A stretch of 64,000 nt of DNA, taken from IMG/VR virus record IMGVR_UViG_3300011934_000017, positions 62,001-126,000 of that record; one strand, given 5' to 3'. The notes under the pieces are model-generated. The model saw nothing but the letters and a program-made list of their open reading frames with translations. It was not told where the DNA came from and ran no database searches. The translations under genes and the position numbers were made by a program. Shown in pieces: positions 241 through 46,476 of this stretch; positions within the stretch are counted from its first letter, which is position 1, and each line of letters starts with the position of its first letter.

Positions 241-1242
241 TCACACAGGGATTAAAAAGCGGTCAGAAGTGGAGCCGACAAACATGTGATCTTTGTATTC
301 TCCCTTCTTAGAAGGAAAATAATCATCTTTTGTTTTATATGGAATTATAGACGTTACAACACCATATCGAGACTGTACGCTTTTTATTCCATATACATTA
401 CCCACTAAGTCTATACCGTTGTTTATTTCAATCAAAGAAATAGGTGACACCATAGGTGCTCGGGACAATCGATTTCGAGACTCGAAGAAACGAATAGGTC
501 CTCCATACCAGAATGAACGGTATCTTGTAGTATAGCGAGAACTATTCCAGTTACAAGATGTGATTCTTTCTACTTGATACCAGTGAGGTTGTGCCATAGG
601 GTCATTAACACTGACATAATAATATCTATAACTGGAGTTGGTAGACCCTGATAGCGACAGCGGAAAAGAGGCGCTTTGCGTCTTATTTATATCGATATCG
701 TTTCCAGTCATTCTACCTGACAAATGATGACCGTCTGTCCAACAAAACTTGGAAGTGCCTCGCGTCTGAAGCTCGAAGCAACCGCTCCATGTGCTTCTGC
801 GATTACCGTACGTTTGGTAGCCAGAATCATTCGATATGTCGGAGAACATTGCTAGCCAACGAGAATGCACGAAAACAAACATCGCACCACCGTAACCAGA
901 AGTGTCTATAACTTGCTGATGGTAGTTCCAACTGTCTAAAGCACAGACGTTTTGAAGTGACGTGGAACCTTCTGCTGCACCGTCTCCTACTTCCAAGCGT
1001 AACATATTAGCACCGCTATTAACGACGCTTAGCCTTACATATTTATAGGTTTCACCGTCGGCGCAAAGAGCTTTTAGAATTTTGGGATTGTTATTGCCCG
1101 GAGAGCTATCGTGATGCATGACCCAACCGTGTTCACCTTCAATAATAACACGACATATCTCAGGTAAAAGTAAATCATTTCCCTCTTGTGGATCAGCGTA
1201 TTCGAAGCGATACGAATTAGGACCGTAGGGAATTACTTTCAT
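241..1242 (-). CDS. Virion structural/tail-associated protein
   Basis: 333 aa, aromatic-rich and beta-type; 4-nt overlap with the upstream tail-fibre gene. Confidence 0.5.
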   Translation of the reverse strand: MKVIPYGPNSYRFEYADPQEGNDLLLPEICRVIIEGEHGWVMHHDSSPGNNNPKILKALCADGETYKYVRLSVVNSGANMLRLEVGDGAAEGSTSLQNVCALDSWNYHQQVIDTSGYGGAMFVFVHSRWLAMFSDISNDSGYQTYGNRRSTWSGCFELQTRGTSKFCWTDGHHLSGRMTGNDIDINKTQSASFPLSLSGSTNSSYRYYYVSVNDPMAQPHWYQVERITSCNWNSSRYTTRYRSFWYGGPIRFFESRNRLSRAPMVSPISLIEINNGIDLVGNVYGIKSVQSRYGVVTSIIPYKTKDDYFPSKKGEYKDHMFVGSTSDRFLIPV

Positions 1243-5010: not shown

Positions 5011-5034
5011 TGTTTAACTCCTATGTTGAGAGAA

Positions 5035-5052: not shown

Positions 5053-5056
5053 CTAT

Positions 5057-11527: not shown

Positions 11528-11537
11528 AATCTATCCT

Positions 11538-11714: not shown

Positions 11715-11725
11715 CTGTATACTCC

Positions 11726-15148: not shown

Positions 15149-15174
15149 GACACCTCCTAATAGGCATTAATAAA

Positions 15175-15851: not shown

Positions 15852-15863
15852 GTTTTGTTCTCT

Positions 15864-16526: not shown

Positions 16527-16555
16527 ATCAAGTCTCCTTGTTTAAACATACGTAT

Positions 16556-19300: not shown

Positions 19301-19330
19301 ATCGTATCTCCTTAACAAGCATAGAAGCGC

Positions 19331-21127: not shown

Positions 21128-21148
21128 ATTAAACTCCACAAAGTCTGT

Positions 21149-30989: not shown

Positions 30990-32458
30990 TAGTAACTGCT
31001 CCTTACACCGAGAGAGCGCTCAGAATAAACAACATCAATAATAGGTTGCCCATCTAAAACAGCGTAATGTGTGCGATCTGGCATTAGAATGTCTTCTTCT
31101 GGGCTAGCCAGTACCACATAATCCACACCTTCGATCTTGCGAATAGCGTCCGTAATGTCAGACTGTGAAAGGCGACGTCCAAGTATTCCGGGCTTCTTTT
31201 GAAACAGCTTCAGAATATTCTCCATCGCCACAATTCGAATCTCACCGTCTTTCGCGCTTGGGACGATAGCAATCTTAATACGAACCTTGACGAAGACTTT
31301 AACAGGATTCCAAGTCTGCACGTCATACGCATCGTGCAAGTGTGGAATGAGCCATCGTGAAAACTGATTCCACGAGCTAGACTGCGGATTAGGATTAGCG
31401 CCACCAAACGTGTCCGACTCTTCTGGCAAAACACACATACGCATCATGTTCATCCAGCGAAGATCGTTTGGTGCAATATCTCTCTGACCTAAAGGCGAAC
31501 AGTCAGCAACACCTGGATAACGCATCACAGTAGCACGAATGTCGGCACCGCTAATCGCCCGACGCTTCGTTCGGAACATGTTAGGTGCAAACATTTTGTA
31601 GTACAGGGCACTCTTTTGATCCGAACCTCCAGCGATTGTAGTGATTGTTTCACCCTTTAGCTCGCTATCACTGCGAACACGTAAGGCAATACCAGGAAGA
31701 CCGCTATTGTCTGCGCTACCGTCTGTTGTGACATACCGAATGATCAACGTAGAATCTCGGTCAAGTATCTTACCGTTCTCTCCGTCTCCAAAGAAGAAAG
31801 ACGTATCCCCGTCCCGTGCGGTGCTTTCGAAGTAAATTGCCTCTTCACCGTGATGTTCAAATACAGCCTTATCAGTCGGTTCCCAAATCTGCGTGGTGCC
31901 CGTGTCGTTATTTTGCGTATACACAAGCACATCTTCAGACGAAACGATAAATCTAGGTTCATCCAAGTAAAACTCTCGCAACGCTACATCAGGATACGCT
32001 TTTAGATCAAAGCGCTTCTCTGCAACGTTGCCAGAGTAGAGGGATACGTTTGAAATAGTGGAACCCGGAGGAATAACGTACTGCTGGCGATTGAAAAACG
32101 TGCGACCAGATAGATCGAACATAGAGTACGGAGGAATGTACTTTGTGCGTGTCGAGTAGTTAGACACTTCGGCGACACAGGACGCACATGTTTTCCTAGA
32201 TATCTGGACACCCAACATGCGAGTGCCTGCAAAGATCGAGCTGTCACGCACAGCAGTCGGAAGAAAAGCTTCACGAAAAGCCATATCCAGATAAAACTGA
32301 TTTGATACATGCGAGCCTGCAAACGTGTCAAGAATGGTAGTACCTACAGAAGTAGGCATCATATCTACCCACGTGCGCTTCTGTTCAAGCTTACGCTGTA
32401 GCTCATTAAACAGAAGTTGGAAATCAGGTGTTACTTTGCTAATAGGTACGGAAGCCAT
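30989..32458 (-). CDS. Baseplate wedge protein (baseplate J / T4 gp6-like)
   Basis: EAFLPTA.RDSS, FFGDGENG, GGSD...RAIS..D motifs. Confidence 0.85.
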   Translation of the reverse strand: MASVPISKVTPDFQLLFNELQRKLEQKRTWVDMMPTSVGTTILDTFAGSHVSNQFYLDMAFREAFLPTAVRDSSIFAGTRMLGVQISRKTCASCVAEVSNYSTRTKYIPPYSMFDLSGRTFFNRQQYVIPPGSTISNVSLYSGNVAEKRFDLKAYPDVALREFYLDEPRFIVSSEDVLVYTQNNDTGTTQIWEPTDKAVFEHHGEEAIYFESTARDGDTSFFFGDGENGKILDRDSTLIIRYVTTDGSADNSGLPGIALRVRSDSELKGETITTIAGGSDQKSALYYKMFAPNMFRTKRRAISGADIRATVMRYPGVADCSPLGQRDIAPNDLRWMNMMRMCVLPEESDTFGGANPNPQSSSWNQFSRWLIPHLHDAYDVQTWNPVKVFVKVRIKIAIVPSAKDGEIRIVAMENILKLFQKKPGILGRRLSQSDITDAIRKIEGVDYVVLASPEEDILMPDRTHYAVLDGQPIIDVVYSERSLGVRSSY

Positions 32459-32847
32459 TAACTAAATCCTCGCGCTAGGTTAAATTGAAAAGTGAATTGG
32501 CGAGCTTCAAGCTCTGGCGCCCTGTATCGAATGTTCACAAAATACTGACTGTTTTGCGGATCAGGAATAACGATGATTTGATCAAAGACAATTCGAAACT
32601 CACCATTGTCTTCTAAGGCACGTTCCATATCGTATTGAATGCGACTCGCTGTAACGTCGTCAATAGGTTCAAAAAGGTGCTTGCCTACATCGCTTCCTAA
32701 ACGCGGTCGAAACCACTTTGATCGCTTCGGTGTCTCGAAGATACAGGCAATATTTTGGTTAAGGCTGTGCTCATTCTTAACCAGTTCGTTCTGCGTTACA
32801 CCTGCATACAGGTTAACGTCTGAATATAAAACATCAATGATAGCCAT
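32458..32847 (-). CDS. Baseplate wedge gp25/GpW-like (start adjusted to MAIIDV at 32847)
   Basis: T.K.S.WFRP.LGS....LFEPID motif; the longer ORF extension overlaps the PAAR-like gene. Confidence 0.85.
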   Translation of the reverse strand: MAIIDVLYSDVNLYAGVTQNELVKNEHSLNQNIACIFETPKRSKWFRPRLGSDVGKHLFEPIDDVTASRIQYDMERALEDNGEFRIVFDQIIVIPDPQNSQYFVNIRYRAPELEARQFTFQFNLARGFS

Positions 32848-32849
32848 AA

Positions 32850-33140
32850 TTAACCTGCAAAAACGTCTGGAGAACCGGTAGCCGCACTGTCGCCACAGCC
32901 CATCATATCGCCGATTCTTTGTTTGTTGAGTTGATCCGCGTAGACAGAAGAGCTTCCTTGAACAGTGACAGGAACGTGACACGAAAAGCAGCAATGCACA
33001 ACCCACTTGTCAGTAAGCCGAACCTGCGCCATTTGATCTGTAAACACGGTAGTCGATGCGGTAGCAGGTCGTGTAGGTGGAAAGCACCCGTGTCCTGTAG
33101 ACATATCGATAGGAAGTCGCACACAAGGTATACCAGCCAT
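32850..33140 (-). CDS. PAAR-like spike tip protein (T4 gp5.4-like)
   Basis: D.STGHGCFPP...H...GSSSV....RIGD...CG...TGSPDVFAG. Confidence 0.85.
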   Translation of the reverse strand: MAGIPCVRLPIDMSTGHGCFPPTRPATASTTVFTDQMAQVRLTDKWVVHCCFSCHVPVTVQGSSSVYADQLNKQRIGDMMGCGDSAATGSPDVFAG

Positions 33141-35589: not shown

Positions 35590-37308
35590 TTATGCACCTT
35601 TTACAGAATCGATAGCTTTCTGAATCTTAGCGGGAGGACGAATACCTAGGTTCGTATAGAACTCTGCTAAGATTTCAGGACTAATATAGTTTCCGATCGC
35701 CGTGCTTGTTGTGACTTTTTCTCCGCTGGTATGACCAAGCTCATTACCTACATCCATAATCTGTTCTTCTACCCACTGGTTTACCTCTCGCTCAGTCCAA
35801 TCTCCGCCTTTCTTGAACGGACTCTTCTTCAGAATGTCTGCGACCATCTTAGTAGCTTTAGATGTTCTGAATTTATGAACAGTGAAGTCGGGATGACCAC
35901 CAAGCGTTCTAAGATACTTAGTGACTAGCGTACTCGTAGGTGTCTTTTGGACACCGCCTTGACCTTTCACCAAAAATATACTATCAGTAGCTTTTTTACC
36001 TTTCATGTACCGCTTAAGGTTCTTAACCAGCAGCTTTAATGCAGGGGAGCTATTATAATGAATAACGTGGTGTTGTTGGGCACCTGTATTACTGGACTGA
36101 GACTTACCTTTGTATTTAACGATGACCTTGGTTTCGTCTATCTTGACGTGACGAACTTGAAGCTGGGTAGTGGCGTAGGTGGTTTCACCTTTTGACGCGG
36201 TACCTGGGTTACCTGGACGTGCAGAAGTAGTGTATATAAACTCCAGGATAGTAGCAAGCTTTCCATTCAATGTGTCCGGCTGCTTCATATCCAAGCGCCA
36301 TTTACGCGCCATTGCAGGTAGCTTGGGCATAGTTGCAGTAACGGCGGCAAACTTTTTATTTTTGGAAGCTGCACGATAATCTTCGGTATAAGCTTTAGAA
36401 GAATCTGTTGCACCGAAAGGAGTGAATCGGCAGACATACGTGTTATCTAGTTTCGGGTCGTACTCTGGGTTCATACGAACTTCACCGGAAGGTGCCGTTA
36501 GAAGTTTCTTGCCTTTGGTTGTATAGAACTTGCCCGCGTCATCTATCATACCGATAAAATCTTTAGGCAAAGTGTTAGGGATGCCTTCATCTTTTAAAGC
36601 TTGAACAACTTCTCCAACAGGTAAGTACGGCTTACCGCTGCTGCGGACCAAAGATTTCAAACGAGTCTTCATTGTGTTTCGAAGCGTTGTTTGCAGCTTC
36701 AAGTATCGAACATGGTCGTCCAGTTTCTTACCTTTAACCTTAGCTATTTTTTGCCACTGTTGAAGAGTGTCTAGCGGAAGTGTTAGACCCGGAGTACCTG
36801 CATACTTCTCTACTAGAGTTTCTAACTCAGAAGTCTCGCCCGAAATGTCATCATGCTCTTCGATAAACATTTCATTAACATCTGGATCTTGAAAGCGTGT
36901 CACAACCTTAGAAAGCCTAGACGACGCAGCACCACTTCCCTTCGTTTGTATGAGGCGCAAATCATTAAGAAGAGCAAGGTCTTCTTTAGTTAGATCCAGC
37001 TCTTCCTTTAGATCAGGTGTCTTACTTTTTAAATCCATAACAACGTCGGTTATAGATTGCTCAAAGTCTTCATCTTCGTTAGGATCCGCACCAGCGACTA
37101 ACTGCTTATGCGCTTTTGTAAGCAGGGTTTTCTTGAGCTTAAAGCGCTTTACGAACGGTTCCATTCGAGCCATCCAGAGATTTACCTTGCGCATATAAGA
37201 AGGTTTATACTCAAACTCCTTAGACATTACAAGAGACATTATAACTTTCATATAAGCCTCAGCACTGTCCTTTTCTACTGCACTAAGTGAAACGAAACCT
37301 CGAAGCAT
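35590..37308 (-). CDS. Type IB DNA topoisomerase with N-terminal extension
   Basis: Catalytic pentad in order: SARPGN (R), YKGK (K), HKFRT (R), LGHT (H), AIGNYI (Y). Confidence 0.85.
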   Translation of the reverse strand: MLRGFVSLSAVEKDSAEAYMKVIMSLVMSKEFEYKPSYMRKVNLWMARMEPFVKRFKLKKTLLTKAHKQLVAGADPNEDEDFEQSITDVVMDLKSKTPDLKEELDLTKEDLALLNDLRLIQTKGSGAASSRLSKVVTRFQDPDVNEMFIEEHDDISGETSELETLVEKYAGTPGLTLPLDTLQQWQKIAKVKGKKLDDHVRYLKLQTTLRNTMKTRLKSLVRSSGKPYLPVGEVVQALKDEGIPNTLPKDFIGMIDDAGKFYTTKGKKLLTAPSGEVRMNPEYDPKLDNTYVCRFTPFGATDSSKAYTEDYRAASKNKKFAAVTATMPKLPAMARKWRLDMKQPDTLNGKLATILEFIYTTSARPGNPGTASKGETTYATTQLQVRHVKIDETKVIVKYKGKSQSSNTGAQQHHVIHYNSSPALKLLVKNLKRYMKGKKATDSIFLVKGQGGVQKTPTSTLVTKYLRTLGGHPDFTVHKFRTSKATKMVADILKKSPFKKGGDWTEREVNQWVEEQIMDVGNELGHTSGEKVTTSTAIGNYISPEILAEFYTNLGIRPPAKIQKAIDSVKGA

Positions 37309-37318
37309 TTTAATTCTC

Positions 37319-37747
37319 CTACAAGAACAATCGGTTGAATTTATTTAGGTATAAAAAGTTTTTGTGCTCAGAACGAGGCACTGGATATCCAATGTAGCGC
37401 ACAGTAGGCGTCCATTGTATTCCAGCAGTAGGCTCTACAACTTGATCGTTCTGCACACAAAAAGAATGAGTGATAATGCGAGGATCGGGATCCCACTCGT
37501 CAGGTACAATAAGATACCCAACGTACACAGGAAGATCGTTCTCTTCAGCAAAAGCTACAGCATTATCATGAGGTGTGGTTCTTGAAAGCGCCCCTATGTT
37601 CTTTCCTTTAGGAATTGATTGTAATGTCCGAAGACGCATCAGTATATCTGGCATATACATGTACTTTCGAGACAGCTTTTGAATAATCAATTCGGGCAAA
37701 GGATTAACATTGGTTTTAGGCGACATTCTGGATATTGATATAAACAT
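37319..37747 (-). CDS. Papain/transglutaminase-like fold protein, catalytic Cys apparently replaced
   Basis: PHDNA...VYVGY...ITHSFC....VVEPT resembles the C-x-x-NA...GY...HxW...DxT pattern. Confidence 0.4.
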   Translation of the reverse strand: MFISISRMSPKTNVNPLPELIIQKLSRKYMYMPDILMRLRTLQSIPKGKNIGALSRTTPHDNAVAFAEENDLPVYVGYLIVPDEWDPDPRIITHSFCVQNDQVVEPTAGIQWTPTVRYIGYPVPRSEHKNFLYLNKFNRLFL

Positions 37748-37755
37748 TACGAATC

Positions 37756-38325
37756 CTATATGTCTTGAAGCCCTAGAAGTCTCGCAGCGTGGAAAGGACG
37801 ATCTTCTAAAGAAATGTTGTAAGGAAGAACAGGAGCACCTAACATAATTCCCATGCTGGACATTGTGTTTTCTAGCAGGCGCATGTGCTGTGCGTCTTTA
37901 CGTCCCTTATAAGGCTCGTCTTTATGTTCCAGATTAGCGTGGGACTGAACAACCAACACCTTATCAAACCTATCTACCAGACTTTTGGCGTTTTGCATAT
38001 ATTCGACAAAAGCCTGATGATCATGGTCACCACGTTCTACAACTGTTGTCATAGTATAACCAATCAGGTCTATTGTGGTTCGATCAAATATCGTGCTCTG
38101 TTGACGGCCTAAACAAAGGTCTAGCGCTTCGTGCATTTTATGAAGTGCTGTATTCTGCACGGCAATACGTTGATTCCAAGGTAGAATCTGATCAGGCAAT
38201 AGACCGTGATGTTCGAAGCTGGCGCGAATAACAGAGGGTTGAAAGTATAGATCGTACTTTTCAGCCAAGGTCATGGCTAAATAGGTTTTACCGCAACGAT
38301 GTACTCCTGAAAGACCGTAAATCAT
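37756..38325 (-). CDS. Nucleotide (dNMP) kinase-like P-loop protein
   Basis: GLSGVHRCGKT Walker A; IFDRTTID motif. Confidence 0.7.
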   Translation of the reverse strand: MIYGLSGVHRCGKTYLAMTLAEKYDLYFQPSVIRASFEHHGLLPDQILPWNQRIAVQNTALHKMHEALDLCLGRQQSTIFDRTTIDLIGYTMTTVVERGDHDHQAFVEYMQNAKSLVDRFDKVLVVQSHANLEHKDEPYKGRKDAQHMRLLENTMSSMGIMLGAPVLPYNISLEDRPFHAARLLGLQDI

Positions 38326-38816
38326 TTTTGTTCCTTATCTATGTATAGACGTTTGCGACGCTTATGTATACGCTTAGACTCTCCTCCACGCCAAGCCATG
38401 CGTAGTATAAGGGCTTGGACAATAGTAGGGTCAACTTCTTTACGCTTTGCGTTCAAAGCTACCTTGATATATCCACTTCTTTCGCAGAGAATCATAACGC
38501 CGACGCCGTGCTCTTTTAACTCGGCACGCACCTTCTTTTGGAACTTGGGTTTGCTCCAAAGCGCTTCAGTGAACACCATATAAAGACGATTGGTGTAAGG
38601 CAAATAGGTCTTCCACTTGTTGTCAGCATTATAGTCTGCAACACAGCTTTTGACTTCGCAGCCTATAAGATCGCCTTTTGTATTCAAGGCAAGTATATCA
38701 AGGCGTTTCTTTCCCCAGCTTTCAACTCCAAGCTCTATATGGCAGGAGTAGCGCTTATGACTCAGGTAGTACACGGCAGCCTTCGTCAGGACGCTGGTTG
38801 TGTGTTTTCTCGACAT
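38322..38816 (-). CDS. mmcB: MmcB-family DNA repair endonuclease (start adjusted to MSRKH at 38816)
   Basis: RLDILAL..KG.LIGCEVKS...DY.AD.KW..YLPY.NRLY. Confidence 0.8.
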   Translation of the reverse strand: MSRKHTTSVLTKAAVYYLSHKRYSCHIELGVESWGKKRLDILALNTKGDLIGCEVKSCVADYNADNKWKTYLPYTNRLYMVFTEALWSKPKFQKKVRAELKEHGVGVMILCERSGYIKVALNAKRKEVDPTIVQALILRMAWRGGESKRIHKRRKRLYIDKEQK

Positions 38817-38874
38817 AACTTTTCCACGCTGAAACAATAACATAAATTATATCGAATTTTGAGGCTGGAGACCG

Positions 38875-38908
38875 AAAAAAGGGCTAGAGTCGAATGACCC
38901 CAGCCCTT
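38875..38908 (-). terminator. Rho-independent terminator
   Basis: Minus strand AAGGGCTGGGGTCA-TTC-GACTCTAGCCC-TTTTTT downstream of 38927..39256. Confidence 0.75.
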
Positions 38909-38926
38909 GAGTATAAAGCTTCTGCG

Positions 38927-39256
38927 TTATTTACCCAATGAGGTTCTACGTGCAACCTTTTCAGCCATACGCTTTTTACGCGGAGCTTCGGAAGCTTCTT
39001 GGCCAATGTCTGCCAGCTTGTCGTTGATATCGTCCACAGCATCACTCAGTTTTCGATATTCAGGAAGCAATTTTCTAATCGCTGCCTTATCTCCTTTATC
39101 TTCGGCTCTATCCATTTTAAGCTTAATGCCGTTCAATTTGGACATCAAAGGCTTTTTCTTTTCTTTCAGCTTGTCAGCTTTTGGGCCTTTAGCTTTGCGC
39201 CTTAGACCAGCATAAGGATCGTCTTGGCTTTTGCTTGTAGAAATAAATACTTGCAT
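38927..39256 (-). CDS. Basic coiled-coil protein (possible DNA-associated internal head protein)
   Basis: 109 aa, very Lys/Arg-rich; begins MQVFISTS. Confidence 0.55.
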   Translation of the reverse strand: MQVFISTSKSQDDPYAGLRRKAKGPKADKLKEKKKPLMSKLNGIKLKMDRAEDKGDKAAIRKLLPEYRKLSDAVDDINDKLADIGQEASEAPRKKRMAEKVARRTSLGK

Positions 39257-39266
39257 TGTGTTTCTC

Positions 39267-39647
39267 CTAGAATTTTTTCAGATATACTGCGGAATTTTCT
39301 TTGCGTATCTGCAAAGCATCGTTAATAGTGCCACCTTGAACTAAACGAAAGCCGTTTTTCCAAAACAAGCGAACGCTAGTATCACTACTACATTGCGCTC
39401 CAATATCACGAGGATAAACGGAGAGCACTTCTTTCAGAAGCTTATCTGCTACACCCTTGTTACGCATTTCAGGGCTTACGAAAGTCTCAACCACAGAATA
39501 CTTAGCAGGAGCATACGGCGGCTTTATGGCTACCACAATTCTGCTTTTAGGGTCTTCATCGTGCTCGAATACATGACCCTTTACATTATCGAACAGGTGT
39601 ATCATTTTTGCAGGTTTGTCGGAAGCACTGGATATGAAAATTTTCAT
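39267..39647 (-). CDS. GNAT-family acetyltransferase
   Basis: FVSPEMRNKGVADKLL acetyl-CoA motif A; S..LFWKNGF motif B. Confidence 0.8.
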   Translation of the reverse strand: MKIFISSASDKPAKMIHLFDNVKGHVFEHDEDPKSRIVVAIKPPYAPAKYSVVETFVSPEMRNKGVADKLLKEVLSVYPRDIGAQCSSDTSVRLFWKNGFRLVQGGTINDALQIRKENSAVYLKKF

Positions 39648-39656
39648 ATGATTCTC

Positions 39657-40166
39657 TTATGTTTCAAACAGACCCACGCGCTCTTCTACAGGGTTCAGTT
39701 CAGGCATTATAGAAAGCAACTCTTCTTTCTTCATGTAAGGCCAATTTTTAGGCATGCGCAGTCTATTACCTTTCTTGTCCATTAAAAGCAGCATGAACCT
39801 GAAACCCTTTTTATGGCAAGCAATAGCCTTAGCGCAAGTCATACTCCAACCACGCTGCTTATTTCCATGGAGTCCTAACGTGTGTGTAGACTTTACTTCT
39901 ACCACGAGACGTTTTGAAATTACAAATAGGTCTGGATAGTAAGTACGCATTTTCTTCCGGTACTTATAACGAATGTTCAATGCGTTTCCAAACTCTTCTT
40001 CACATCGAATATCAGAAGCTTCAAGTCCCAGTTCGTCCGTTAAGTAGCGTATGGCTTGCGGCTCATAGCCTTGAACCTTTACGTGTCTGTCACCTATTGT
40101 GGTTTCATACTGTCTAAACTTTTTTGTCTTTCTTCGCCGTCGCTTATGTTTGTGTGCGGAAAGCAT
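39657..40166 (-). CDS. PD-(D/E)XK endonuclease-like protein
   Basis: VQGYEP...RTYYPDLF.....VVEVKS. Confidence 0.7.
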   Translation of the reverse strand: MLSAHKHKRRRRKTKKFRQYETTIGDRHVKVQGYEPQAIRYLTDELGLEASDIRCEEEFGNALNIRYKYRKKMRTYYPDLFVISKRLVVEVKSTHTLGLHGNKQRGWSMTCAKAIACHKKGFRFMLLLMDKKGNRLRMPKNWPYMKKEELLSIMPELNPVEERVGLFET

Positions 40167-40173
40167 GGTACAC

Positions 40174-40419
40174 CTATAGATCGAGAGAAATCTGGACCAT
40201 GTGAGAAGATGATTCGGAAGCAGTTTCGTATCCTGACATTCGCTTCCAAATTCCCATCACATAGGCATAAAACTCGTTAGAGTCTAGCTCAAGTCCTTTT
40301 TTCTCCGCTATAGTCTTAGCGCGTTCCCAAAGAGCTTCTAGCTCTTCAAAAGCCTCTTCCTCTTCGATATCGTGGCGTTCAGCGTAGGTTTTGGCAAAAG
40401 AACGAATAACGGCAGGCAT
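40174..40419 (-). CDS. Small conserved-type phage protein (ChaB-like helical pattern)
   Basis: MP..I.SFA...E.LWERAK......FYAYVMGIWKRM. Confidence 0.5.
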   Translation of the reverse strand: MPAVIRSFAKTYAERHDIEEEEAFEELEALWERAKTIAEKKGLELDSNEFYAYVMGIWKRMSGYETASESSSHMVQISLDL

Positions 40420-40472
40420 AAGTAAACTCCTAAAGTGCTCTTAGGGTAAATTATATGCCTACCGTCGAATAT

Positions 40473-40949
40473 TCAAACAGTTTCTTCTAGCTTATCTAGC
40501 ATAGGAGATAGCGCAGAAGGCAGTTTCTTTCGTGCTTTTTCAATAGTGAACCACTTTCGTTGGCGTCGTTCGGCTTCTGGCCATTCTGTCAGTCGTTCTT
40601 TTACTTCCATTGCATACACATCAACTTTCTGCGGACGACCTGTAGCACCCTTGATATAAGCATACTTTCCAAGCTTCTTTTTAGCTTTGCCTAGAAGACC
40701 TGCCTCTTCGTATGCTTCTGTCTCAGCAGACTTGCGCTTGGTCATATCGGGCTCTACGCCGCCTTTGGGAAGTCCCCACTTTTCAGAGTGGGAGCTGGAG
40801 ACCAGTAGAACTTGAAGCTCTCCATGTTTGTTGAAACGATAGGGAATAACGCCCGATTGCTTGCGAGGCTTTCGAGACGCATTCTTTCTTCGAATCTTTT
40901 TAGGCAGTTTTTGAGTAGGCCCTGATGCTAATGAAACAGTGATTTCCAT
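40473..40949 (-). CDS. Nudix hydrolase
   Basis: WGLPKGGVEPDMTKRKSAETEAYEEAGL Nudix box; W.E...RQRKWF as in diadenosine/diphosphoinositol polyphosphate hydrolases. Confidence 0.9.
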   Translation of the reverse strand: MEITVSLASGPTQKLPKKIRRKNASRKPRKQSGVIPYRFNKHGELQVLLVSSSHSEKWGLPKGGVEPDMTKRKSAETEAYEEAGLLGKAKKKLGKYAYIKGATGRPQKVDVYAMEVKERLTEWPEAERRQRKWFTIEKARKKLPSALSPMLDKLEETV

Positions 40950-40959
40950 CGTATTATCC

Positions 40960-41457
40960 TCACCAGTTTTGAACTACACTTGCTACAGCGTAGCGTGGTT
41001 TACCGGGTCGTTTGAAAAATTCGTGATTACCGATCTTGCCTAAAAATTCGTATTCAAAATACCAATCTGGCAGCAAATGATCTGGAATGACGCTTGGGTT
41101 TAAGTAATGAGTAGCGCCTTTGACAGGCGAGTCTGGTAGACCGTCGTAAAGGAAGCTATAGACTATTCGCGCTACTGCAAGCTCCTCTTCCTCTGAAGGG
41201 TCCCCAATAGGATGACCTTCAATAGTCCAAGAAAACTGATAGGGCTGGTATATCACTTTAGACACACCTTCAGGAAAGTCTGTTCTTAGCGATCTTTCGT
41301 GAACAACTTCAAGAACAGCCAGTTGGCCCAAAAGAGGTTCACCACGCGCCTCATGTAATACGTTTTCGATCAGGTTAGCGTGTGAAGGATATTGCATATC
41401 GGAATTATGAAGATCAACAACAACCGCCATAGGAAGTAGCAAGGATTCGAGTAACAT
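40960..41457 (-). CDS. Cell-wall hydrolase (SleB/Hydrolase_2 family)
   Basis: HEARGEP..GQLAV..V...R...FP..V..VIYQPYQFSW; GATHY.NP; IGNH.F. Confidence 0.9.
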   Translation of the reverse strand: MLLESLLLPMAVVVDLHNSDMQYPSHANLIENVLHEARGEPLLGQLAVLEVVHERSLRTDFPEGVSKVIYQPYQFSWTIEGHPIGDPSEEEELAVARIVYSFLYDGLPDSPVKGATHYLNPSVIPDHLLPDWYFEYEFLGKIGNHEFFKRPGKPRYAVASVVQNW

Positions 41458-41542
41458 AAAAGCTCCTAGATAAAATGTGCAAACTTTTCAAGTTTAACAA
41501 AGTGCGTAACCACTTTTCTGAATACATCAGGGTTACTCTTTC

Positions 41543-41551
41543 ATTATATCA
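41543..41551 (-). promoter_or_regulatory. Possible host sigma70 extended -10 promoter
   Basis: Minus strand TGATATAAT in the intergenic gap upstream of the cell-wall hydrolase. Confidence 0.35.
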
Positions 41552-41568
41552 TAGGTAGCTTTTAAAAT

Positions 41569-43086
41569 CTAGTCCCAGCGCTTGTGTAGCGCTTCTATCA
41601 GTCCCTTCTCTATTGCCTTGTCCGTCATAACAATAATATCGCCGAACGCTTCCAAGCATAGGTCCACATATCTTTGGTACTCGATACGGCCTTCGTAGGC
41701 GTTCTTATCATAACCTTTCGATAACCACTGGATAGCCTCTTCGCCGTCCAATTTGCGTAAAAGCATTTCCTTACGCAACATCTTAAAGTGGTCGCTTTTG
41801 AGTAAGTGACGATCTTCAATAGAGGCCCACTTTTTCTCAGCAGCCTGATACTCTGCCTGTGAAAGCTTATCCCGCGCTATGTCCAAAGCGCGAAGCATGG
41901 CATTACCATCAGCGTGTCCAGAAATGCGGGCAAAAGACAAAATACCGTGCATAAACCGGTTCAGATTCTGATCTATGATGACTGTGGCTGCATCTATAGC
42001 TCCTTTAATTTCAGGGCGAATATCCCCACGCACTGGAGTCAAGTCGCCTTCGTCCTTAATCGTCATGTTTTTAACAAGGGATTCTACATGCCTTTTAGGG
42101 AACAGTAAAAGACGCCGATTTTTGCTAATAGCGTTTCGGGCAGTCAGTTTAAGTCCTTCGAACGCATAAGAGCTGGTTGTAGTGCCATACTTGTAGCTTA
42201 TGAAAGACATTTTTACGTCTATACGATAGCGAAGTTCTTCCAAAAGATCAGGAATATTTTTCTTGAAATCTTTGGACGAATGGAGAACCAAATACTTATC
42301 ACCTTCAAGTTCCAATAACATTGTAGGTTCGGGACTAGCTAAGGTCGCTTCTGTTAGATCGTACTCCTTAGTGTCAATCTTATACCCGTGCTTATTGAGC
42401 CGGTGCATATCTTCCAAGAACAACGGGCCGTGACCTGCTTGATTGTACAGTGCGTTTCCATCTTCGTAGAAACGCTTATAGTGAAGCAAGTGTATCATTT
42501 CATGCAATACAACTTCGCACACACGCGGAATATCGGTCAAAGCGTGTTTAGCCAGCTTCAATGTGTAGTTAAGCTGACCGCCTTTCATCTTTAACATGGC
42601 TTGTCCGGAAAACTTGGACGCTTCTGAAAGCAGAAAGCGCACTTGGGTCGGACACTCATTCTTGAAATGTAGCTTATTGAAATAGTTATAGAGCCTAGCT
42701 ATGTCCTGCTTCTTAGGCGGCATAGGAATACTGGGAAAGAATTTCTCAGGTAAACCAGCGTCAGGATTGTGAACACGTTCACCTGTCTTAACGTCTTTGC
42801 CTCCAATGCCTGCTTTCAGACTTACACCCTTAACACGTCCCGAATATCCTGTAGAAAGACGAATAATCTTTTTGACTTCTGCTTCGGTCATAGTGAAGAC
42901 AATGCTTGGATCCGCAAGAACCGCGAGCTTCAGCTTGCCTGCATAAGTACGAATGCCATACTTCATCTTAGGTGCTAAGTCTAAATCATATTTCGGATTG
43001 TGATTTTCAAACGAAAGAGTTTTCTTACCTTGATATTGGTACCACTGGTATTTATCAATGGATACAGCAGCTAATGAAGTAAACAT
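41569..43086 (-). CDS. SprT-like zinc metalloprotease with an extra N-terminal domain
   Basis: LYNYFNKLHF...VVLHEMIH...GHGPLF...M..LN SprT signature. Confidence 0.8.
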   Translation of the reverse strand: MFTSLAAVSIDKYQWYQYQGKKTLSFENHNPKYDLDLAPKMKYGIRTYAGKLKLAVLADPSIVFTMTEAEVKKIIRLSTGYSGRVKGVSLKAGIGGKDVKTGERVHNPDAGLPEKFFPSIPMPPKKQDIARLYNYFNKLHFKNECPTQVRFLLSEASKFSGQAMLKMKGGQLNYTLKLAKHALTDIPRVCEVVLHEMIHLLHYKRFYEDGNALYNQAGHGPLFLEDMHRLNKHGYKIDTKEYDLTEATLASPEPTMLLELEGDKYLVLHSSKDFKKNIPDLLEELRYRIDVKMSFISYKYGTTTSSYAFEGLKLTARNAISKNRRLLLFPKRHVESLVKNMTIKDEGDLTPVRGDIRPEIKGAIDAATVIIDQNLNRFMHGILSFARISGHADGNAMLRALDIARDKLSQAEYQAAEKKWASIEDRHLLKSDHFKMLRKEMLLRKLDGEEAIQWLSKGYDKNAYEGRIEYQRYVDLCLEAFGDIIVMTDKAIEKGLIEALHKRWD

Positions 43087-43096
43087 GGCGTACTCC

Positions 43097-43525
43097 TTAA
43101 ACGAAAATCACGTTTGCGACTCCCGCCTGAGGAGTATGAAAACTAATAGTAACAGCATTAAAATCTACGGAAAGAGTGTCGTACAAAACACCTTCAAAAT
43201 TTTCATCTAGGATTGTAACAACGACATTCCTACTGTTCTTGTCATGCTCTATTACCCATTCAGAAGCAGGTTCGCCCATTACAAAAGAGACACCTTCCGC
43301 AGTACCTGTAGCACCTCCTCCAAGCTCAACAAAGTCAGCGAGACTGATTGAGGACAGTGCGCCGTCTACCATAGCGAGCATCTGTCCGTCTTCCAGTACA
43401 AGACCTGATAACTGTCTAGGTCCCGCACCGCGTCTCACTATGACAGATTCTTTTGGAGCATCCTCTTCTAAATAAGGACGTTTGGGAAGCTCTAGTTGTA
43501 TAAACGACTCAAATTGGTTTGCCAT
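43097..43525 (-). CDS. Virion protein with C-terminal EWVIEH domain
   Basis: SEWVIEHDKN...VTI.F..PQAG.A paralogous to the 4-10 kb domains. Confidence 0.65.
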   Translation of the reverse strand: MANQFESFIQLELPKRPYLEEDAPKESVIVRRGAGPRQLSGLVLEDGQMLAMVDGALSSISLADFVELGGGATGTAEGVSFVMGEPASEWVIEHDKNSRNVVVTILDENFEGVLYDTLSVDFNAVTISFHTPQAGVANVIFV

Positions 43526-45579
43526 TATGATAGCTCCTCTATATCTAGTTCAAGTGTTCCCGAAGTGTTAGCGCTGGCAAAATCAACGTCGCTCAACCAA
43601 ATATGAGTACCCATGGAAGCCTTGTAATTACCTTCGCTGTCTACCACAGAATAAGAAGCGCGAGCATCCCGAGTGTCGGTTCTTAACGTTAAAAGAGAAT
43701 CGGAGCCAGCATAGTTTACACGAGTATTTGTGACGTTGTAAACGGGAACGCCGATAGGAGCAATGCGAGAAAGTGCGGGCATGGTTATCGTTGTCTTCGT
43801 AAAACCAGCAACAGCATAACTTAGATCAGGTTTTTCAGTTACAGGCATACCAGAAAGACCTTGTGCTGCTAGGTCCGAAAATACTGTAACACCACGAACA
43901 TCAGAGTTCGTGATTTTCAAGTTTCGAGACCAAACTGTATCGCTTTCTTTAGTCCAAACTCCTGTCCAAGAACCTACAGGAGGCGTTAAGAATGGAGAAG
44001 CATGTAATTCTTGATCAAACTCAAGTCTTACCTTATAATCAATCCCATCGGGCGAAGAGCGTAGGTGTGGAATTGGCGTAGCTTCACCTACTTCAAGTCC
44101 TGGATTTTGGAAAGACACTAAAAAGGGCGAAATAATTCCTTGAAAGTCTGTGCGATACACATACCAATTTTCACCGTTCTTAGATAGAGGAGCGGGACCA
44201 GTCGTTGAGCCTACAGAACCATCAGAAGGCCATGTTGCCCCATCCCAACCACCAACACTTCCCGTAGATAGATCAATAAACGTCGCTCGGCCTAACGCAG
44301 CAGGATAAGCAAAATATCCGTAACCCGCCGGAGCTTCTAAGAAGAAGTCCTGATCGTTTGTAGAGGAAAGTGTCTGTGCTAAAGAATCGATACCGGAGAC
44401 AGAAAGATTAGGAGACGTAGATGCTCCATAAACAGGAAGACTGGATATCTTCTGAGAACTGCCTCGAAGCACAGAATTTTCTATAACGAGAGACAGCATT
44501 GAAGGTGCGATACTGGAGATAGGAATATCAAAGACCCCTTCAAAGTAGGTATCGTTAGAGTCTTTCCAAGCACGAATTGTTATGCCTCCGGAAAGACTAT
44601 AAGTTGCCACATCCACAGTCAACGTGCGCGAAGAAAGAATAGCAGAAGGAGAACCGTCAAAAGTACCATGATCGAAAGAAAACTCGCTACGCTCTGCGTT
44701 CAGGTACGAAATAGTAGCCAAACACGTATCGTTAAGACCCAGAGCATCCTTGTTGTTACTGAAAGCTGAAAGTGTCACGGTCACTTGCGGAACTGTTTGA
44801 TCAAGGCGTATTGGATCCGACTCGAAGCTAGTTCCTTTTGTTCCTAATTGATTTTCAGCATACAGTGAGATCCTATTTAAACCAGAAGCATTGGATGCCT
44901 CAACAACACCGCTAAAGACTCTGTATCCATCAGAAGAACTATTAGCGGCACCTAAAGTTAAAGTATAGTTGCGAGAAGTGGCAGCACCTAAGTTTAAAGC
45001 TTTTATTTCGACAGCAGAGTTCTCAACAGAACCCTCGACAGAAATAAGGTCGCCAGCCTTAACTGCGGTCTGTACTCCGGGAAAAGCTGTCACGCTCAAG
45101 CTTGTAATAACAGGTCCGCTACCTTCGACGCTAATACTAATAGAAGCTTCAGTCCCTTGAGAGGACTTTAACGTTAAAGTACCACTTTCAGACATTTCAA
45201 TAGGTACGCTACCTGTAAACGAGTTCGGACTTCCTTCTACCCCTTCTACATTTGCGTAGCTTAATAAAACATCATTCATCCATACCGACACTTCAGGTGC
45301 ATCAAACGCGATTTTACTATCGCAGATAAAACCTACAGTAATAAAAGCAGTGTCCGAAACACAACTGTTGATTATTTTGTTAGGCGGTGTGGTGTCTTTA
45401 TACTGTTTGTTACCTACATTGCCTTCAGAAGTGGGCATAACGCTAGTGATGAATATTGGACGCTGTGAGGTATCGTTAAATACTTTATCCAAGTCCTCTT
45501 TTCGAATAGCATGATCGGGTTCCGTAGGAGCATAATGCAGACGTAAGAAGCCTAATGCTTCCAAATTGTGTGCTTTCAC
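43525..45579 (-). CDS. Virion structural protein, Ig-like, with one YGYFAYP domain (GTG start at 45579)
   Basis: GGAGAG RBS before GTG; AGYGYFAYPAALGRATF...GGWDGATWP...WYVYRTDF shared with 25083..30989. Confidence 0.65.
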   Translation of the reverse strand: MKAHNLEALGFLRLHYAPTEPDHAIRKEDLDKVFNDTSQRPIFITSVMPTSEGNVGNKQYKDTTPPNKIINSCVSDTAFITVGFICDSKIAFDAPEVSVWMNDVLLSYANVEGVEGSPNSFTGSVPIEMSESGTLTLKSSQGTEASISISVEGSGPVITSLSVTAFPGVQTAVKAGDLISVEGSVENSAVEIKALNLGAATSRNYTLTLGAANSSSDGYRVFSGVVEASNASGLNRISLYAENQLGTKGTSFESDPIRLDQTVPQVTVTLSAFSNNKDALGLNDTCLATISYLNAERSEFSFDHGTFDGSPSAILSSRTLTVDVATYSLSGGITIRAWKDSNDTYFEGVFDIPISSIAPSMLSLVIENSVLRGSSQKISSLPVYGASTSPNLSVSGIDSLAQTLSSTNDQDFFLEAPAGYGYFAYPAALGRATFIDLSTGSVGGWDGATWPSDGSVGSTTGPAPLSKNGENWYVYRTDFQGIISPFLVSFQNPGLEVGEATPIPHLRSSPDGIDYKVRLEFDQELHASPFLTPPVGSWTGVWTKESDTVWSRNLKITNSDVRGVTVFSDLAAQGLSGMPVTEKPDLSYAVAGFTKTTITMPALSRIAPIGVPVYNVTNTRVNYAGSDSLLTLRTDTRDARASYSVVDSEGNYKASMGTHIWLSDVDFASANTSGTLELDIEELS

Positions 45580-45595
45580 TTTTGACTCTCCAAAT

Positions 45596-45621
45596 AAAAA
45601 AGGGGCCAAAAGAGGCCCCTT
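45596..45621 (-). terminator. Rho-independent terminator
   Basis: Minus strand AAGGGGCC-TCTTTT-GGCCCCTT-TTTT. Confidence 0.8.
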
Positions 45622-45629
45622 ACGATAAA

Positions 45630-45896
45630 TTACGGTGCATAGTGTCGAAACATTTCTTCCGTGTCGTCGCAAGTGATGACTTGCTCACCGTTCAACACAG
45701 CAGCTTTTACAGATGCTCCAGCATTTTTGCATTTGTACCTGTAATCCGCATCATGTTGTAAGGGGATGAACATTGCGGTATTTTTAGGTCCAGAAGCGAG
45801 CACGTACACATGCTTTTCGCCAAGAAAAGAAACCACACGTTGTGAAATCTTAACTTCATTCAAATTTTCTTTTGTTAAATTAGTTACCATATCCAC
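45630..45896 (-). CDS. Hypothetical protein
   Basis: 88 aa; AAGGA RBS; operon spacing. Confidence 0.55.
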   Translation of the reverse strand: MDMVTNLTKENLNEVKISQRVVSFLGEKHVYVLASGPKNTAMFIPLQHDADYRYKCKNAGASVKAAVLNGEQVITCDDTEEMFRHYAP

Positions 45897-46278: not shown

Positions 46279-46476
46279 TCAGTGTAGGTAGGTGGAAGCG
46301 TTCTCTGAAAGAAAACGCGAGTTAGGAGGCTTAGGAAATATTCTAAAGCCTCGATACAGATGGCGATCAAACAAAGGATCGACAGACTTTATATTCTCAG
46401 TCATGGCAGGATCGTTTTGTTTGGCTCCCCAAATAGATAACGTATTCAAATAACGTCTTTCTTCGAAAAGCTTCAT
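46279..46476 (-). CDS. Hypothetical protein
   Basis: 65 aa; TAATG coupling to the gp5-like gene. Confidence 0.5.
   Translation of the reverse strand: MKLFEERRYLNTLSIWGAKQNDPAMTENIKSVDPLFDRHLYRGFRIFPKPPNSRFLSENASTYLH

What the first reader, a model, noticed from the sequence alone, without database searches (positions are those of the whole stretch)
35590..43086. Type IB topoisomerase together with an SprT-like protease
Seen: an intact R-K-R-H-Y type IB topoisomerase with a ~300-aa N-terminal extension, and an HExxH SprT-like protease, both carrying the leader. Established: Topo IB is typical of eukaryotes, poxviruses/giant viruses and some bacteria, and poxviruses package it for early transcription. 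Eukaryotic SPRTN/Wss1 proteases remove trapped Top1-DNA adducts. Inference: a packaged topoisomerase relaxes incoming DNA, and the protease may clear DNA-protein crosslinks or cleave host defence proteins.
Basis: partly seen in the sequence, partly recalled or inferred. Interest (0 to 1): 0.6.

Follow-up and report, generated by a model that had tools for sequence, protein, structure and literature searches.

The report
Phage topoisomerase IB paired with Spartan-like protease
A 220-kb jumbo phage encodes a genuine type IB DNA topoisomerase and a Spartan/SprT-type zinc protease that stay genetically linked across many distant phages and begin with the same short leader peptide, which suggests (unproven) that they work as a pair on phage DNA, as Top1 and SPRTN do in eukaryotes.

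Summary
Both genes are real and intact on the minus strand of a complete 220,237-bp phage genome related to Pseudomonas phages PaBG and Lu11. The 572-aa protein is a type IB topoisomerase: Pfam Topoisom_I 1.9e-16, invariant R364-K402-R481-H526-Y541, fold Z 18-21 to TopIB against 9-13 to tyrosine recombinases and about 7 to protelomerases. A phage-specific helical extension of about 225 aa precedes it. The 505-aa protein has a KMPT-N domain and a SprT domain with HEMIH and GHGPLF; its best structural match is human SPRTN (Z 13.8).

New here: in 47 viral records that carry this topoisomerase, 31 have a SprT-like gene, and 28 of those lie within 10 kb on the same strand, in several different arrangements. 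Two phage SprT lineages hit only topoisomerase-IB phages among 50,697 phage records. The shared leader holds up in cross-validation, and a 142-aa neighbour carries it too.

Virion packaging is unproven: PaBG's 14-band proteome lacks both proteins, although its virion helicase gp202 starts with a similar peptide. Both gene families were already noted in these phages. The linkage and the shared leader were not found in the searched literature.

The parts
35590..37308 (-). Type IB topoisomerase gene (572 aa, P0001)
   Evidence: Pfam Topoisom_I 1.9e-16. phrog_23460 4.7e-154. 43% identical to PaBG gp84 'DNA topoisomerase I'. AF2 model pLDDT 87.6.
35590..36384 (-). Catalytic domain, residues 309-572, with R364, K402, R481, H526, Y541
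   Evidence: Alignment to 2f4q. The five residues are invariant in alignment A1. VIA-align Z 21.5 to 6z01, 21.1 to human Top1, 18.5 to Deinococcus TopIB, 17.6 to variola.
36385..36627 (-). Beta-rich TopIB N-domain equivalent, residues 228-308
   Evidence: Strands in the model. Covered by the alignments to human Top1 (model residues 216..571) and variola (274..557).
36634..37272 (-). Phage-specific all-helical N-terminal extension, residues 13-225
   Evidence: Helices H13-H224 in the model. Only generic helical-bundle matches, Z 6 or less. Atlas feature search gives a weak lead to Topoisom_I_N at 0.80, below the level to trust.
37273..37308 (-). Leader peptide of the topoisomerase (first 12 codons; core F-V-S-L-S-A-V-E)
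   Evidence: pLDDT below 50 for residues 1-9. Conserved in the family. Ranked first by the SprT-derived PSSM.
37319..37747 (-). Conserved 142-aa protein (PaBG gp86 family) that starts with a leader-like M-F-I-S-I-S
   Evidence: 36% identical to PaBG gp86, with the alignment starting after the leader. Third-ranked N-terminus with both PSSMs, 10.3-10.4 bits. A Shine-Dalgarno sequence lies before the first ATG. The Atlas record starts at Met8, so the start codon is not certain.
37756..38325 (-). P-loop kinase, dTMP-kinase-like
   Evidence: AAA_28 1.9e-8. phrog thymidylate kinase. Orthologues in relatives hit Thymidylate_kin.
38322..38843 (-). MmcB-like PD-(D/E)XK nuclease
   Evidence: PF06319 1.5e-13. 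Same position as PaBG gp88.
38879..38908 (-). Terminator-like hairpin (13 pairs plus a T-run) that splits the cassette into two likely transcription units
38927..41457 (-). Variable island of six genes: 109 aa, GNAT-like 126 aa, DUF7487/PD-(D/E)XK 169 aa, 81 aa, NUDIX 158 aa, SleB-like cell-wall hydrolase 165 aa
   Evidence: The island is absent from PaBG and Lu11, where SprT directly abuts MmcB, and its content differs in other relatives.
41569..43086 (-). SprT/Spartan-like metalloprotease gene (505 aa, P0002)
   Evidence: Pfam SprT-like and KMPT-N. AF2 model pLDDT 81.
42367..42714 (-). SprT catalytic domain, residues 125-240, with H195-E196-x-x-H199 and H219
   Evidence: phmmer alignment to human SPRTN 6mdw. 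Foldseek 8.7e-5. VIA-align Z 13.8, next best about 8. Residues invariant in alignment A2.
42847..43050 (-). KMPT-N beta domain, residues 13-80
   Evidence: PF20294 8.5e-9. One of six KMPT-N paralogues in the genome.
43054..43086 (-). Leader peptide of SprT (first 11 codons; core F-T-S-L-A-A-V)
   Evidence: pLDDT below 50 for residues 1-7. Conserved in 10 orthologues. 14.7 bits with the topoisomerase-derived PSSM.
41572..42345 (-). C-terminal alpha/beta domain (residues 248-348) and helical domain (358-505) of the protease, function unknown
   Evidence: Model. No specific fold match beyond SPRTN residues up to 184.

Best explanation
The region is a conserved jumbo-phage cassette bounded by two genes. 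One end encodes a genuine type IB topoisomerase: a canonical core with a phage-specific ~225-aa helical N-terminal extension. The other end encodes a Spartan/SprT-type zinc metalloprotease: a KMPT-N domain, a SprT domain and a C-terminal region of unknown function.

Shown:
- Both folds and both active sites are intact.
- The two genes are co-inherited and kept close together in divergent phages, in several different gene orders.
- Their products, and a 142-aa protein encoded next to the topoisomerase, begin with the same short disordered leader.

Inferred:
- The topoisomerase relaxes phage DNA through a transient Tyr541-3'-phosphate bond.
- The protease digests topoisomerase molecules that become trapped on the DNA, as SPRTN and Wss1 do for eukaryotic Top1. 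A trapped adduct would block replication forks and, plausibly, DNA packaging by the terminase.
- In this clade the adjacent MmcB-like nuclease and a phage NAD-dependent ligase could finish the repair.
- The shared leader sends the proteins to one place. The procapsid is the leading candidate, in which case they would enter the next cell with the DNA.
For: Enzyme identities:
- Topoisomerase.
- Protease.

Linkage:
- PaBG and Lu11 have the gene order SprT, MmcB, kinase, small ORF(s), topoisomerase.
- Of 47 viral records with this topoisomerase, 31 have PF10263 hits, and 28 of those lie within 10 kb on the same strand. In records of 150 kb or more the figure is 12 of 14, against a chance expectation of about 0.10 each.
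- The arrangement differs between clades: 1.4-5.8 kb upstream; directly upstream and overlapping (PhiXhv-12); 0.5-1.4 kb downstream, including a tandem pair in L056; and 4-9 kb downstream.
- All linked copies keep HExxH, and nearly all keep the third histidine.
- tblastn with two phage SprT lineages against 50,697 phage records hits only topoisomerase-IB phages: PaBG, Lu11, HRDY3, BCSR5 and Motura (compared).

Leader:
- Cross-validated PSSMs.
- Disordered in both models.
- Conserved at the peptide level, not the DNA level.
- PaBG gp202, the 221-kDa virion band, starts with a similar S-L-S-A-A-I-D peptide.

Context:
- Relatives carry DarA_C, PcfJ and NAD-ligase genes in the same neighbourhood.
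Against: - 16 of 47 topoisomerase-bearing records, including complete genomes such as phiRSL1, show no SprT-like gene. The protease is therefore not required by the topoisomerase.
- In three or four records the SprT-like gene lies 14-72 kb from the topoisomerase.
- No zinc-ribbon or ZBD-like DNA-binding subdomain was recognised in the protease.
- The KMPT-N module is shared with five non-protease paralogues. That fits an effector family as well as it fits a repair enzyme.
- Much of the linkage within a clade is ordinary inherited synteny. Several unrelated gene families are equally conserved around the topoisomerase in the distant clade.
- The PaBG virion proteome lists neither protein.
- The Lu11-clade SprT proteins have no leader.
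- The complex prediction gave no answer.
Confidence: 0.4

Rival explanations
1. The two proteins are independent injected effectors. The leader (with KMPT-N in the protease) is a capsid-targeting tag. The topoisomerase acts alone on incoming DNA. The protease cleaves host proteins, including defence proteins, or processes co-packaged proteins, as proposed for the metallopeptidase domains of polyvalent proteins. It has nothing to do with topoisomerase adducts.
For: - Shared disordered leader.
- Six KMPT-N paralogues with different C-terminal parts and long charged low-complexity linkers.
- DarA_C and PcfJ genes as neighbours in relatives.
- A virion SNF2 helicase in PaBG with a similar N-terminus.
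- Iyer et al. 2021 favoured host-protein targeting for these SprT-like peptidases (PMC7824862).
Against: - This reading does not explain why this SprT lineage is found only in topoisomerase-IB phages and stays next to that gene through rearrangements.
- The closest structural relative is the DPC protease SPRTN, far above ArdC-type peptidases: Z 13.8 against 4.9.
- No proteomic evidence of packaging.
Confidence: 0.3
2. There is no functional link. The topoisomerase is an ordinary replication- or transcription-phase enzyme of a large genome, the SprT-like gene is an unrelated accessory gene, and the two are neighbours only through shared ancestry of a gene island. The N-terminal similarity has no targeting role.
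For: - Both genes are confined to one broad group of jumbo phages (subgroup 2.2 of PMC7824862).
- The cassette holds plain nucleotide-metabolism genes.
- Other gene families are also syntenic around the topoisomerase in the distant clade.
- A third of the records lack SprT.
Against: - Linkage survives at least four different gene orders, including direct overlap and a tandem duplication next to the topoisomerase.
- MmcB, the kinase and the 142-aa gene do not follow the topoisomerase into distant clades, whereas SprT does.
- The reciprocal PSSM result is very unlikely by chance: 0 of 6843 control blocks.
Confidence: 0.2
3. The 572-aa protein is a tyrosine recombinase or telomere resolvase rather than a topoisomerase.
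For: - Weak Phage_integrase match: E 0.001, 19.3 bits.
- The catalytic fold is shared by the whole superfamily.
Against: - The integrase match is below the Pfam cut-off of 27.1 bits, whereas Topoisom_I is far above its own.
- Foldseek E values are 1e-9 to 1e-6 for TopIB against 6e-3 or worse for recombinases.
- VIA-align Z is 18-21 for TopIB, 9-13 for recombinases and about 7 for protelomerases.
- It has the TopIB lysine K402 and the N-domain.
Confidence: 0.02

Closest known systems
Pseudomonas phage PaBG gp84 (annotated 'DNA topoisomerase I') and gp89 (annotated 'SprT-like domain-containing protein Spartan'); Lu11 gp197 and gp193; the 'phage-specific topoisomerase I' and 'SprT-like metallopeptidase' of subgroup 2.2 jumbo phages (Iyer et al. 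2021, PMC7824862)
   Same: These are orthologues (43% and 25% identity). They sit in the same cassette order: SprT, MmcB-like, kinase, small ORF, topoisomerase.
   Different: The window's phage has six extra genes inserted between SprT and MmcB, and its cassette lies inside the baseplate module rather than beside the head genes. The literature lists the two families separately and does not mention their linkage or the shared leader.
Poxvirus (vaccinia/variola) type IB topoisomerase
   Same: Same fold and the same R-K-R-H-Y pentad (Z 17.6). It is a virus-encoded enzyme. From my own knowledge, the poxvirus enzyme is packaged in the virion core.
   Different: The phage protein is about 260 aa longer at the N-terminus. 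Packaging is not shown. No poxvirus partner protease is known to me.
Eukaryotic SPRTN/Wss1 acting on Top1-DNA cleavage complexes
   Same: The protease domain is closest to human SPRTN, with the same HExxH and GHGxxF zinc site. It is paired with a TopIB.
   Different: In eukaryotes the partnership is functional, not a gene linkage. The phage protein lacks a recognised ZBD, basic region or ubiquitin/SUMO modules. It has KMPT-N and an unknown C-terminal half instead.
Bacterial TopIB (Deinococcus radiodurans, 2f4q/3m4a)
   Same: Sequence-detectable homology (E 2e-5) and structural Z 18.5.
   Different: The bacterial enzyme is 346 aa and has Asn at the position of H526. It has no helical extension and no leader.
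Phage T4 capsid targeting sequence on internal proteins and Alt; phage P1 Dar proteins
   Same: A short N-terminal peptide is shared by otherwise unrelated proteins. Relatives encode DarA_C, and PaBG packages a DarB-like SNF2 protein.
   Different: The sequences are unrelated. Neither cleavage nor targeting has been demonstrated, and the analogy rests on my own knowledge of T4 and P1.

Membership tests
Type IB topoisomerase | Match to the Topoisom_I catalytic-core profile above the curated cut-off | tested here: met
   60.6 bits against a cut-off of 23.7.
Type IB topoisomerase | Catalytic pentad Arg-Lys-Arg-His/Asn-Tyr in register | tested here: met
   R364, K402, R481, H526 and Y541 align to the Deinococcus pentad and are invariant in 25 homologues.
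Type IB topoisomerase | Fold closer to TopIB than to tyrosine recombinases or protelomerases, with an N-terminal clamp domain | tested here: met
   Z 17.6-21.5 against 9-13 and about 7. The alignments to human Top1 and variola extend into residues 216-308.
Type IB topoisomerase | ATP-independent relaxation through a 3'-phosphotyrosyl intermediate | not testable with these tools
   Needs the purified protein.
SprT/Spartan metalloprotease | Match to the SprT-like profile above the cut-off | tested here: met
   37 bits against a cut-off of 25.6.
SprT/Spartan metalloprotease | HExxH plus a third zinc-binding histidine about 20 residues downstream (GHGxxF) | tested here: met
   H195, E196, H199 and H219 are aligned to SPRTN and invariant. 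They are retained in the linked copies of distant clades.
SprT/Spartan metalloprotease | Fold of the SprT protease domain | tested here: met
   6mdx Z 13.8, rmsd 2.9 over 118 residues, with the next family at about 8. Foldseek 8.7e-5.
SprT/Spartan metalloprotease | Attached DNA-binding element (the ZBD of SPRTN, or the zinc ribbon of bacterial SprT) | tested here: inconclusive
   No Pfam domain and no Cys-rich motif. The alignment to SPRTN runs to chain residue 184 but covers only 118 residues.
SprT/Spartan metalloprotease | DNA-stimulated proteolysis of DNA-bound proteins | not testable with these tools
   Needs an assay.
Capsid-targeting leader (T4 CTS type) | A short N-terminal peptide shared by unrelated proteins, lying outside their folded domains | tested here: met
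   Reciprocal PSSMs. pLDDT below 50.
Capsid-targeting leader (T4 CTS type) | The proteins that carry it are found in virions | tested here: inconclusive
   The PaBG 14-band proteome lacks gp84, gp86 and gp89. It does contain gp202, whose N-terminus scores 8.7 bits.
Capsid-targeting leader (T4 CTS type) | Removal by the prohead protease | not testable with these tools
   A prohead-protease homologue exists (52% identical to PaBG gp226), but no cleavage data are available.
Polyvalent proteins (Iyer et al. 2017) | A very large polypeptide combining many effector domains with metallopeptidase domains | tested here: not met
   The protein is 505 aa with two recognised domains. It resembles a stand-alone version at most.
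Tyrosine recombinase / protelomerase | Profile match above the cut-off and the best fold match | tested here: not met
   Phage_integrase 19.3 bits against a cut-off of 27.1. Lower structural scores.

The most novel reading that the evidence does not exclude
These jumbo phages load a type IB topoisomerase, a Spartan-like protease and a small partner protein into the capsid by means of a common N-terminal targeting peptide. The topoisomerase would then travel with the genome, or even covalently on it, into the next host, and the co-delivered protease would free the DNA. This would be the first dedicated topoisomerase-adduct protease outside eukaryotes and the first packaged topoisomerase in a bacterial virus.
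Probability: 0.2. Interest if true: 0.8.

Novelty: new variant of a known kind. Interest (0 to 1): 0.55.

Why it matters
Dedicated proteases for DNA-protein crosslinks are well studied in eukaryotes (SPRTN, Wss1), but their SprT relatives in bacteria and phages have no established substrate. A phage lineage that keeps a SprT-type protease next to its own TopIB offers a simple, genetically tractable pair for asking whether SprT proteases evolved as partners of covalent DNA enzymes. Cultured members exist: PaBG on PAO1 and Lu11 on P. putida.

The shared leader, if it is a capsid-targeting signal, would also give a handle on how jumbo phages choose which enzymes to ship with their DNA.

Tried and rejected
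- **Nucleotide search.** Megablast of the region against 50,697 phage records found no match.
- **Polynucleotide-kinase idea.** I considered that the P-loop kinase might be a 5'-OH polynucleotide kinase completing a Top1cc repair pathway. This is not supported: it matches AAA_28 and phrog thymidylate kinase, the orthologues match Thymidylate_kin, and the PDB search gave nothing.
- **Complex prediction.** Full-length topoisomerase with SprT residues 111-505 scored 0.00, which the tool reports as no answer. It counts neither for nor against binding.
- **Helical extension.** The Atlas feature search gave Topoisom_I_N at 0.78-0.80, which is a lead only. The structure search gave TM below 0.35.
- **142-aa protein.** No Pfam or PHROG family; the Atlas lead to YunG-like at 0.88 is not trusted.
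- **KMPT-N leader profile.** A profile built from the five other KMPT-N paralogues scores the topoisomerase leader only at the 1% level. The statement 'same leader as all KMPT-N proteins' is therefore suggestive, not established.
- **Looser leader-like N-termini.** Matches of the MK-I-F-I-S-S type in small proteins, and the Acb1/2H homologue, are probably ordinary first beta-strands. I do not count them.
- **HeH-like motif.** A guessed HeH-like DNA-binding motif at the N-terminus of distant-clade SprT proteins has no Pfam support.
- **DarA_C.** Not found in this genome.
- **BLAST clustering.** All-against-all clustering of neighbourhood ORFs was too insensitive to unite SprT across clades.
- **Literature.** Searches for virion proteomics that mention a phage TopIB found none.
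- **Not used.** The read-mapping tools and the large representative protein search were not needed.

Full report
**What the window is.** The window is bases 62001-126000 of a 220,237-bp viral record with direct terminal repeats, rated 100% complete. It has no close nucleotide relative among 50,697 phage records. At the protein level its nearest cultured relatives are the jumbo Pseudomonas phages PaBG, Lu11 and HRDY3 and phage NCTB.

**The observation.** Both ORFs are intact on the minus strand: 35590-37308 (572 aa) and 41569-43086 (505 aa).

*The 572-aa protein:*
- It matches Pfam Topoisom_I at 60.6 bits (cut-off 23.7). It matches Phage_integrase only below that family's cut-off.
- phmmer finds the Deinococcus radiodurans TopIB structure. 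The printed alignment puts R364, K402, R481, H526 and Y541 on that enzyme's catalytic positions.
- All five residues are invariant in 25 homologues, which come from contigs of up to 293 kb.
- An AlphaFold model (pLDDT 87.6) matches type IB topoisomerases best. VIA-align gives Z 21.5 to an archaeal TopIB, 21.1 to human Top1, 18.5 to Deinococcus and 17.6 to variola. Tyrosine recombinases score 9-13 and protelomerases about 7. Foldseek gives the same order.
- The 'N-terminal extension' has three parts: a disordered leader (residues 1-9), an all-helical region (13-225) with no convincing fold match, and a beta domain (228-308) that corresponds to the usual TopIB N-domain.

*The 505-aa protein:*
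- It has a KMPT-N domain (residues 13-78) and a SprT-like domain (residues 131-239; 37 bits, cut-off 25.6).
- phmmer aligns its HEMIH and GHGPLF motifs to the zinc site of human SPRTN.
- Its model (pLDDT 81) has SPRTN as by far the best structural match: Z 13.8, against about 8 for minigluzincins, 5.9 for Wss1 and 4.9 for ArdC. Foldseek gives 8.7e-5.
- H195, E196, H199 and H219 are invariant in its orthologues.
- The C-terminal half (residues 248-505) has no recognised fold, and no zinc-ribbon or ZBD-type DNA-binding element was found.

**Surroundings.** Between the two genes lie, in order:
- a SleB-like cell-wall hydrolase;
- a NUDIX hydrolase;
- an 81-aa ORF;
- a DUF7487/PD-(D/E)XK protein;
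- a weakly GNAT-like protein;
- a 109-aa ORF;
- a strong terminator-like hairpin at 38879-38908;
- an MmcB-like nuclease;
- a dTMP-kinase-like P-loop protein;
- a conserved 142-aa protein.

In PaBG and Lu11 the order is simply SprT, MmcB-like, kinase, small ORF(s), topoisomerase. The six genes upstream of the hairpin are therefore an insertion into an older five-gene cassette. Metagenomic relatives fill the same slot with other accessory genes, such as a subtilisin-like S8 peptidase, PhoH, a response-regulator domain and an NAD-ligase.

In this phage the cassette sits inside the baseplate module. A gp5-like spike gene lies at 46476-47288 and a gp25-like gene at 32458-33006, next to a divergently transcribed thymidylate synthase. 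Position alone therefore does not say whether the products are structural.

- Among five cultured topoisomerase-IB phages, four have a SprT-like gene. In Xanthomonas phage PhiXhv-12 it is the ORF immediately upstream of, and overlapping, the topoisomerase gene. In Motura it lies 25 kb away. phiRSL1 has none.
- I then fetched 63 viral loci that encode relatives of the topoisomerase and searched 47 of the underlying records in full for PF10263. Thirty-one have a hit, and in 28 of these the nearest hit lies within 10 kb on the same strand.
- In records of at least 150 kb the figure is 12 of 14, where chance would give about 0.10 each.
- The arrangement changes with the clade: upstream at 1.4-5.8 kb, directly upstream, downstream at 0.5-1.4 kb (once as a tandem pair), or downstream at 4-9 kb.
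- All linked copies keep HExxH, and nearly all keep the third histidine.
- tblastn with two different phage SprT lineages against all 50,697 phage records hits only phages that also carry the topoisomerase (compared).
- The MmcB-like, kinase and 142-aa genes do not accompany the topoisomerase outside the PaBG/Lu11 clade.

Three caveats apply:
- All these phages belong to one broad group, and within a clade much of this is inherited synteny.
- A third of the records have no SprT, including four estimated to be at least 90% complete.
- Other gene families were not searched at Pfam sensitivity.

**The leader.**
- Both proteins begin with a hydrophobic residue, any residue, then S-L-[SA]-A-[AV]. 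This is conserved in their orthologues, and both models predict it to be disordered.
- Codon usage differs between the two copies, so the conservation is at the peptide level and not the DNA level.
- In a cross-validated test, a PSSM made only from SprT orthologues of other phages ranks the window's topoisomerase first among 232 predicted N-termini of the genome. A PSSM made only from topoisomerase orthologues ranks SprT second, after the topoisomerase itself. No internal control block of 6843 reaches either score.
- Third in both rankings is the 142-aa protein encoded directly upstream of the topoisomerase. Its homology to PaBG gp86 starts only after the leader. Its start codon is not certain.
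- The genome has six KMPT-N paralogues with broadly similar N-termini and long charged low-complexity linkers. A profile built from the other five scores the topoisomerase leader only at the 1% level.
- The Lu11-clade SprT proteins have no leader, so the leader is a detachable add-on.
- Looser leader-like starts in small proteins are probably ordinary first beta-strands, and I do not count them.

**Is anything packaged?**
- The only proteome available is PaBG's 14 Coomassie bands (PMC7412058). It lists neither gp84, gp86 nor gp89.
- It does list gp202, a 221-kDa SNF2-type protein whose N-terminus contains S-L-S-A-A-I-D. This phage has a 2004-aa homologue.
- Relatives carry DarA_C and PcfJ genes beside the topoisomerase. 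KMPT-N and zincin peptidases belong to the domain vocabulary of proteins delivered with DNA (PMC5512222).
- Together this makes packaging plausible but not shown.

**Most likely mechanism.** I consider it most likely (about 0.4) that the two enzymes work as a pair on phage DNA:
- The topoisomerase relaxes DNA through Tyr541.
- The Spartan-like protease removes trapped covalent complexes.
- The neighbouring MmcB-like nuclease and the phage NAD-ligase are candidates for finishing the repair.
- The shared leader brings the proteins to one place, possibly the procapsid.

The folds, the active sites, the linkage and the shared leader are shown. The activities, the substrate and the destination are inferred. 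The rivals are independent injected effectors (0.3), no functional link (0.2), and a recombinase or resolvase (0.02). The complex prediction gave no answer.

**Comparison with what is known.**
- GenBank already annotates PaBG gp84 as a topoisomerase and gp89 as SprT-like.
- Iyer et al. 2021 list a phage-specific topoisomerase I and SprT-like peptidases in subgroup 2.2 jumbo phages, and suggest that the peptidases target host proteins.
- I found no paper that links the two and none that describes the leader.
- The genes themselves are therefore known. The conserved pairing and the common leader are a new variant worth testing in PaBG or Lu11.

Noticed in passing
window 51677-52564(-); genome (G000:C1) 4688-6157, 183743-185077, 185093-186721, 198923-200854: There are five further KMPT-N paralogues besides SprT. 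One is fused to a KTSC domain. The others have long Pro/Lys-rich or Asp/Glu-rich low-complexity linkers and unknown C-terminal parts. All start with an x-L-[SA]-A-x-x-K/R-D-P peptide just before the domain.
   Followed up: partly
window 40174-40419(-): An 81-aa ORF has an N-terminal motif (M-P, ..., A-E, ..., W-E-x-A-K) that recurs at the start of proteins of varied length near the topoisomerase gene in distant clades. The family appears in 21 of 41 loci, including a Motura gene annotated as adenine glycosylase.
   Followed up: partly
window 38879-38908(-): A strong terminator-like hairpin (13 pairs, 7 of them G-C, then a T-run) lies between the inserted island and the MmcB-like gene. A TATAAT-like box follows directly before the MmcB ORF.
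   Followed up: no
window 10721-21139(-): Five consecutive ORFs are probably tail-fibre genes (inferred from position and length; not scanned against any family library): 10721-11527, 15175-15678, 15864-16526, 16556-19318 and 19331-21139. They share an N-terminal M-(A/G)-G-L-T-R/K-P motif, which suggests interchangeable fibres on one adaptor.
   Followed up: no
genome (G000:C1) 11994-12500 and 11243-11986 (outside the window): An Acb1 (anti-CBASS phosphodiesterase) homologue (3e-16) lies directly after the homologue of the PaBG prohead protease gp226.
   Followed up: partly
genome (G000:C1) 190367-196381 (outside the window): A 2004-aa SNF2-type helicase is 40% identical to PaBG gp202, the largest protein band of the PaBG virion. 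It looks like a DarB-like packaged protein.
   Followed up: partly
window 43525-45672(-): The mechanically called TTG start of this 715-aa ORF (positional counterpart of the PaBG 'tail assembly protein'; homology not tested) probably lies too far upstream. A terminator-like hairpin at 45600-45621 falls inside the first codons.
   Followed up: no
L056:11407-14057: In one distant relative, two tandem SprT-like paralogues (438 and 445 aa, both with HEMCH and GHGPNW) follow the topoisomerase gene with a gap of only 2 bases.
   Followed up: partly
L011:5208-6683: In an NCTB-like phage, a ~480-aa protein of unknown function inside the same neighbourhood carries a strong copy of the leader (F-V-S-L-S-A-E-E, 16.3 bits), if an upstream start codon is used.
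   Followed up: no
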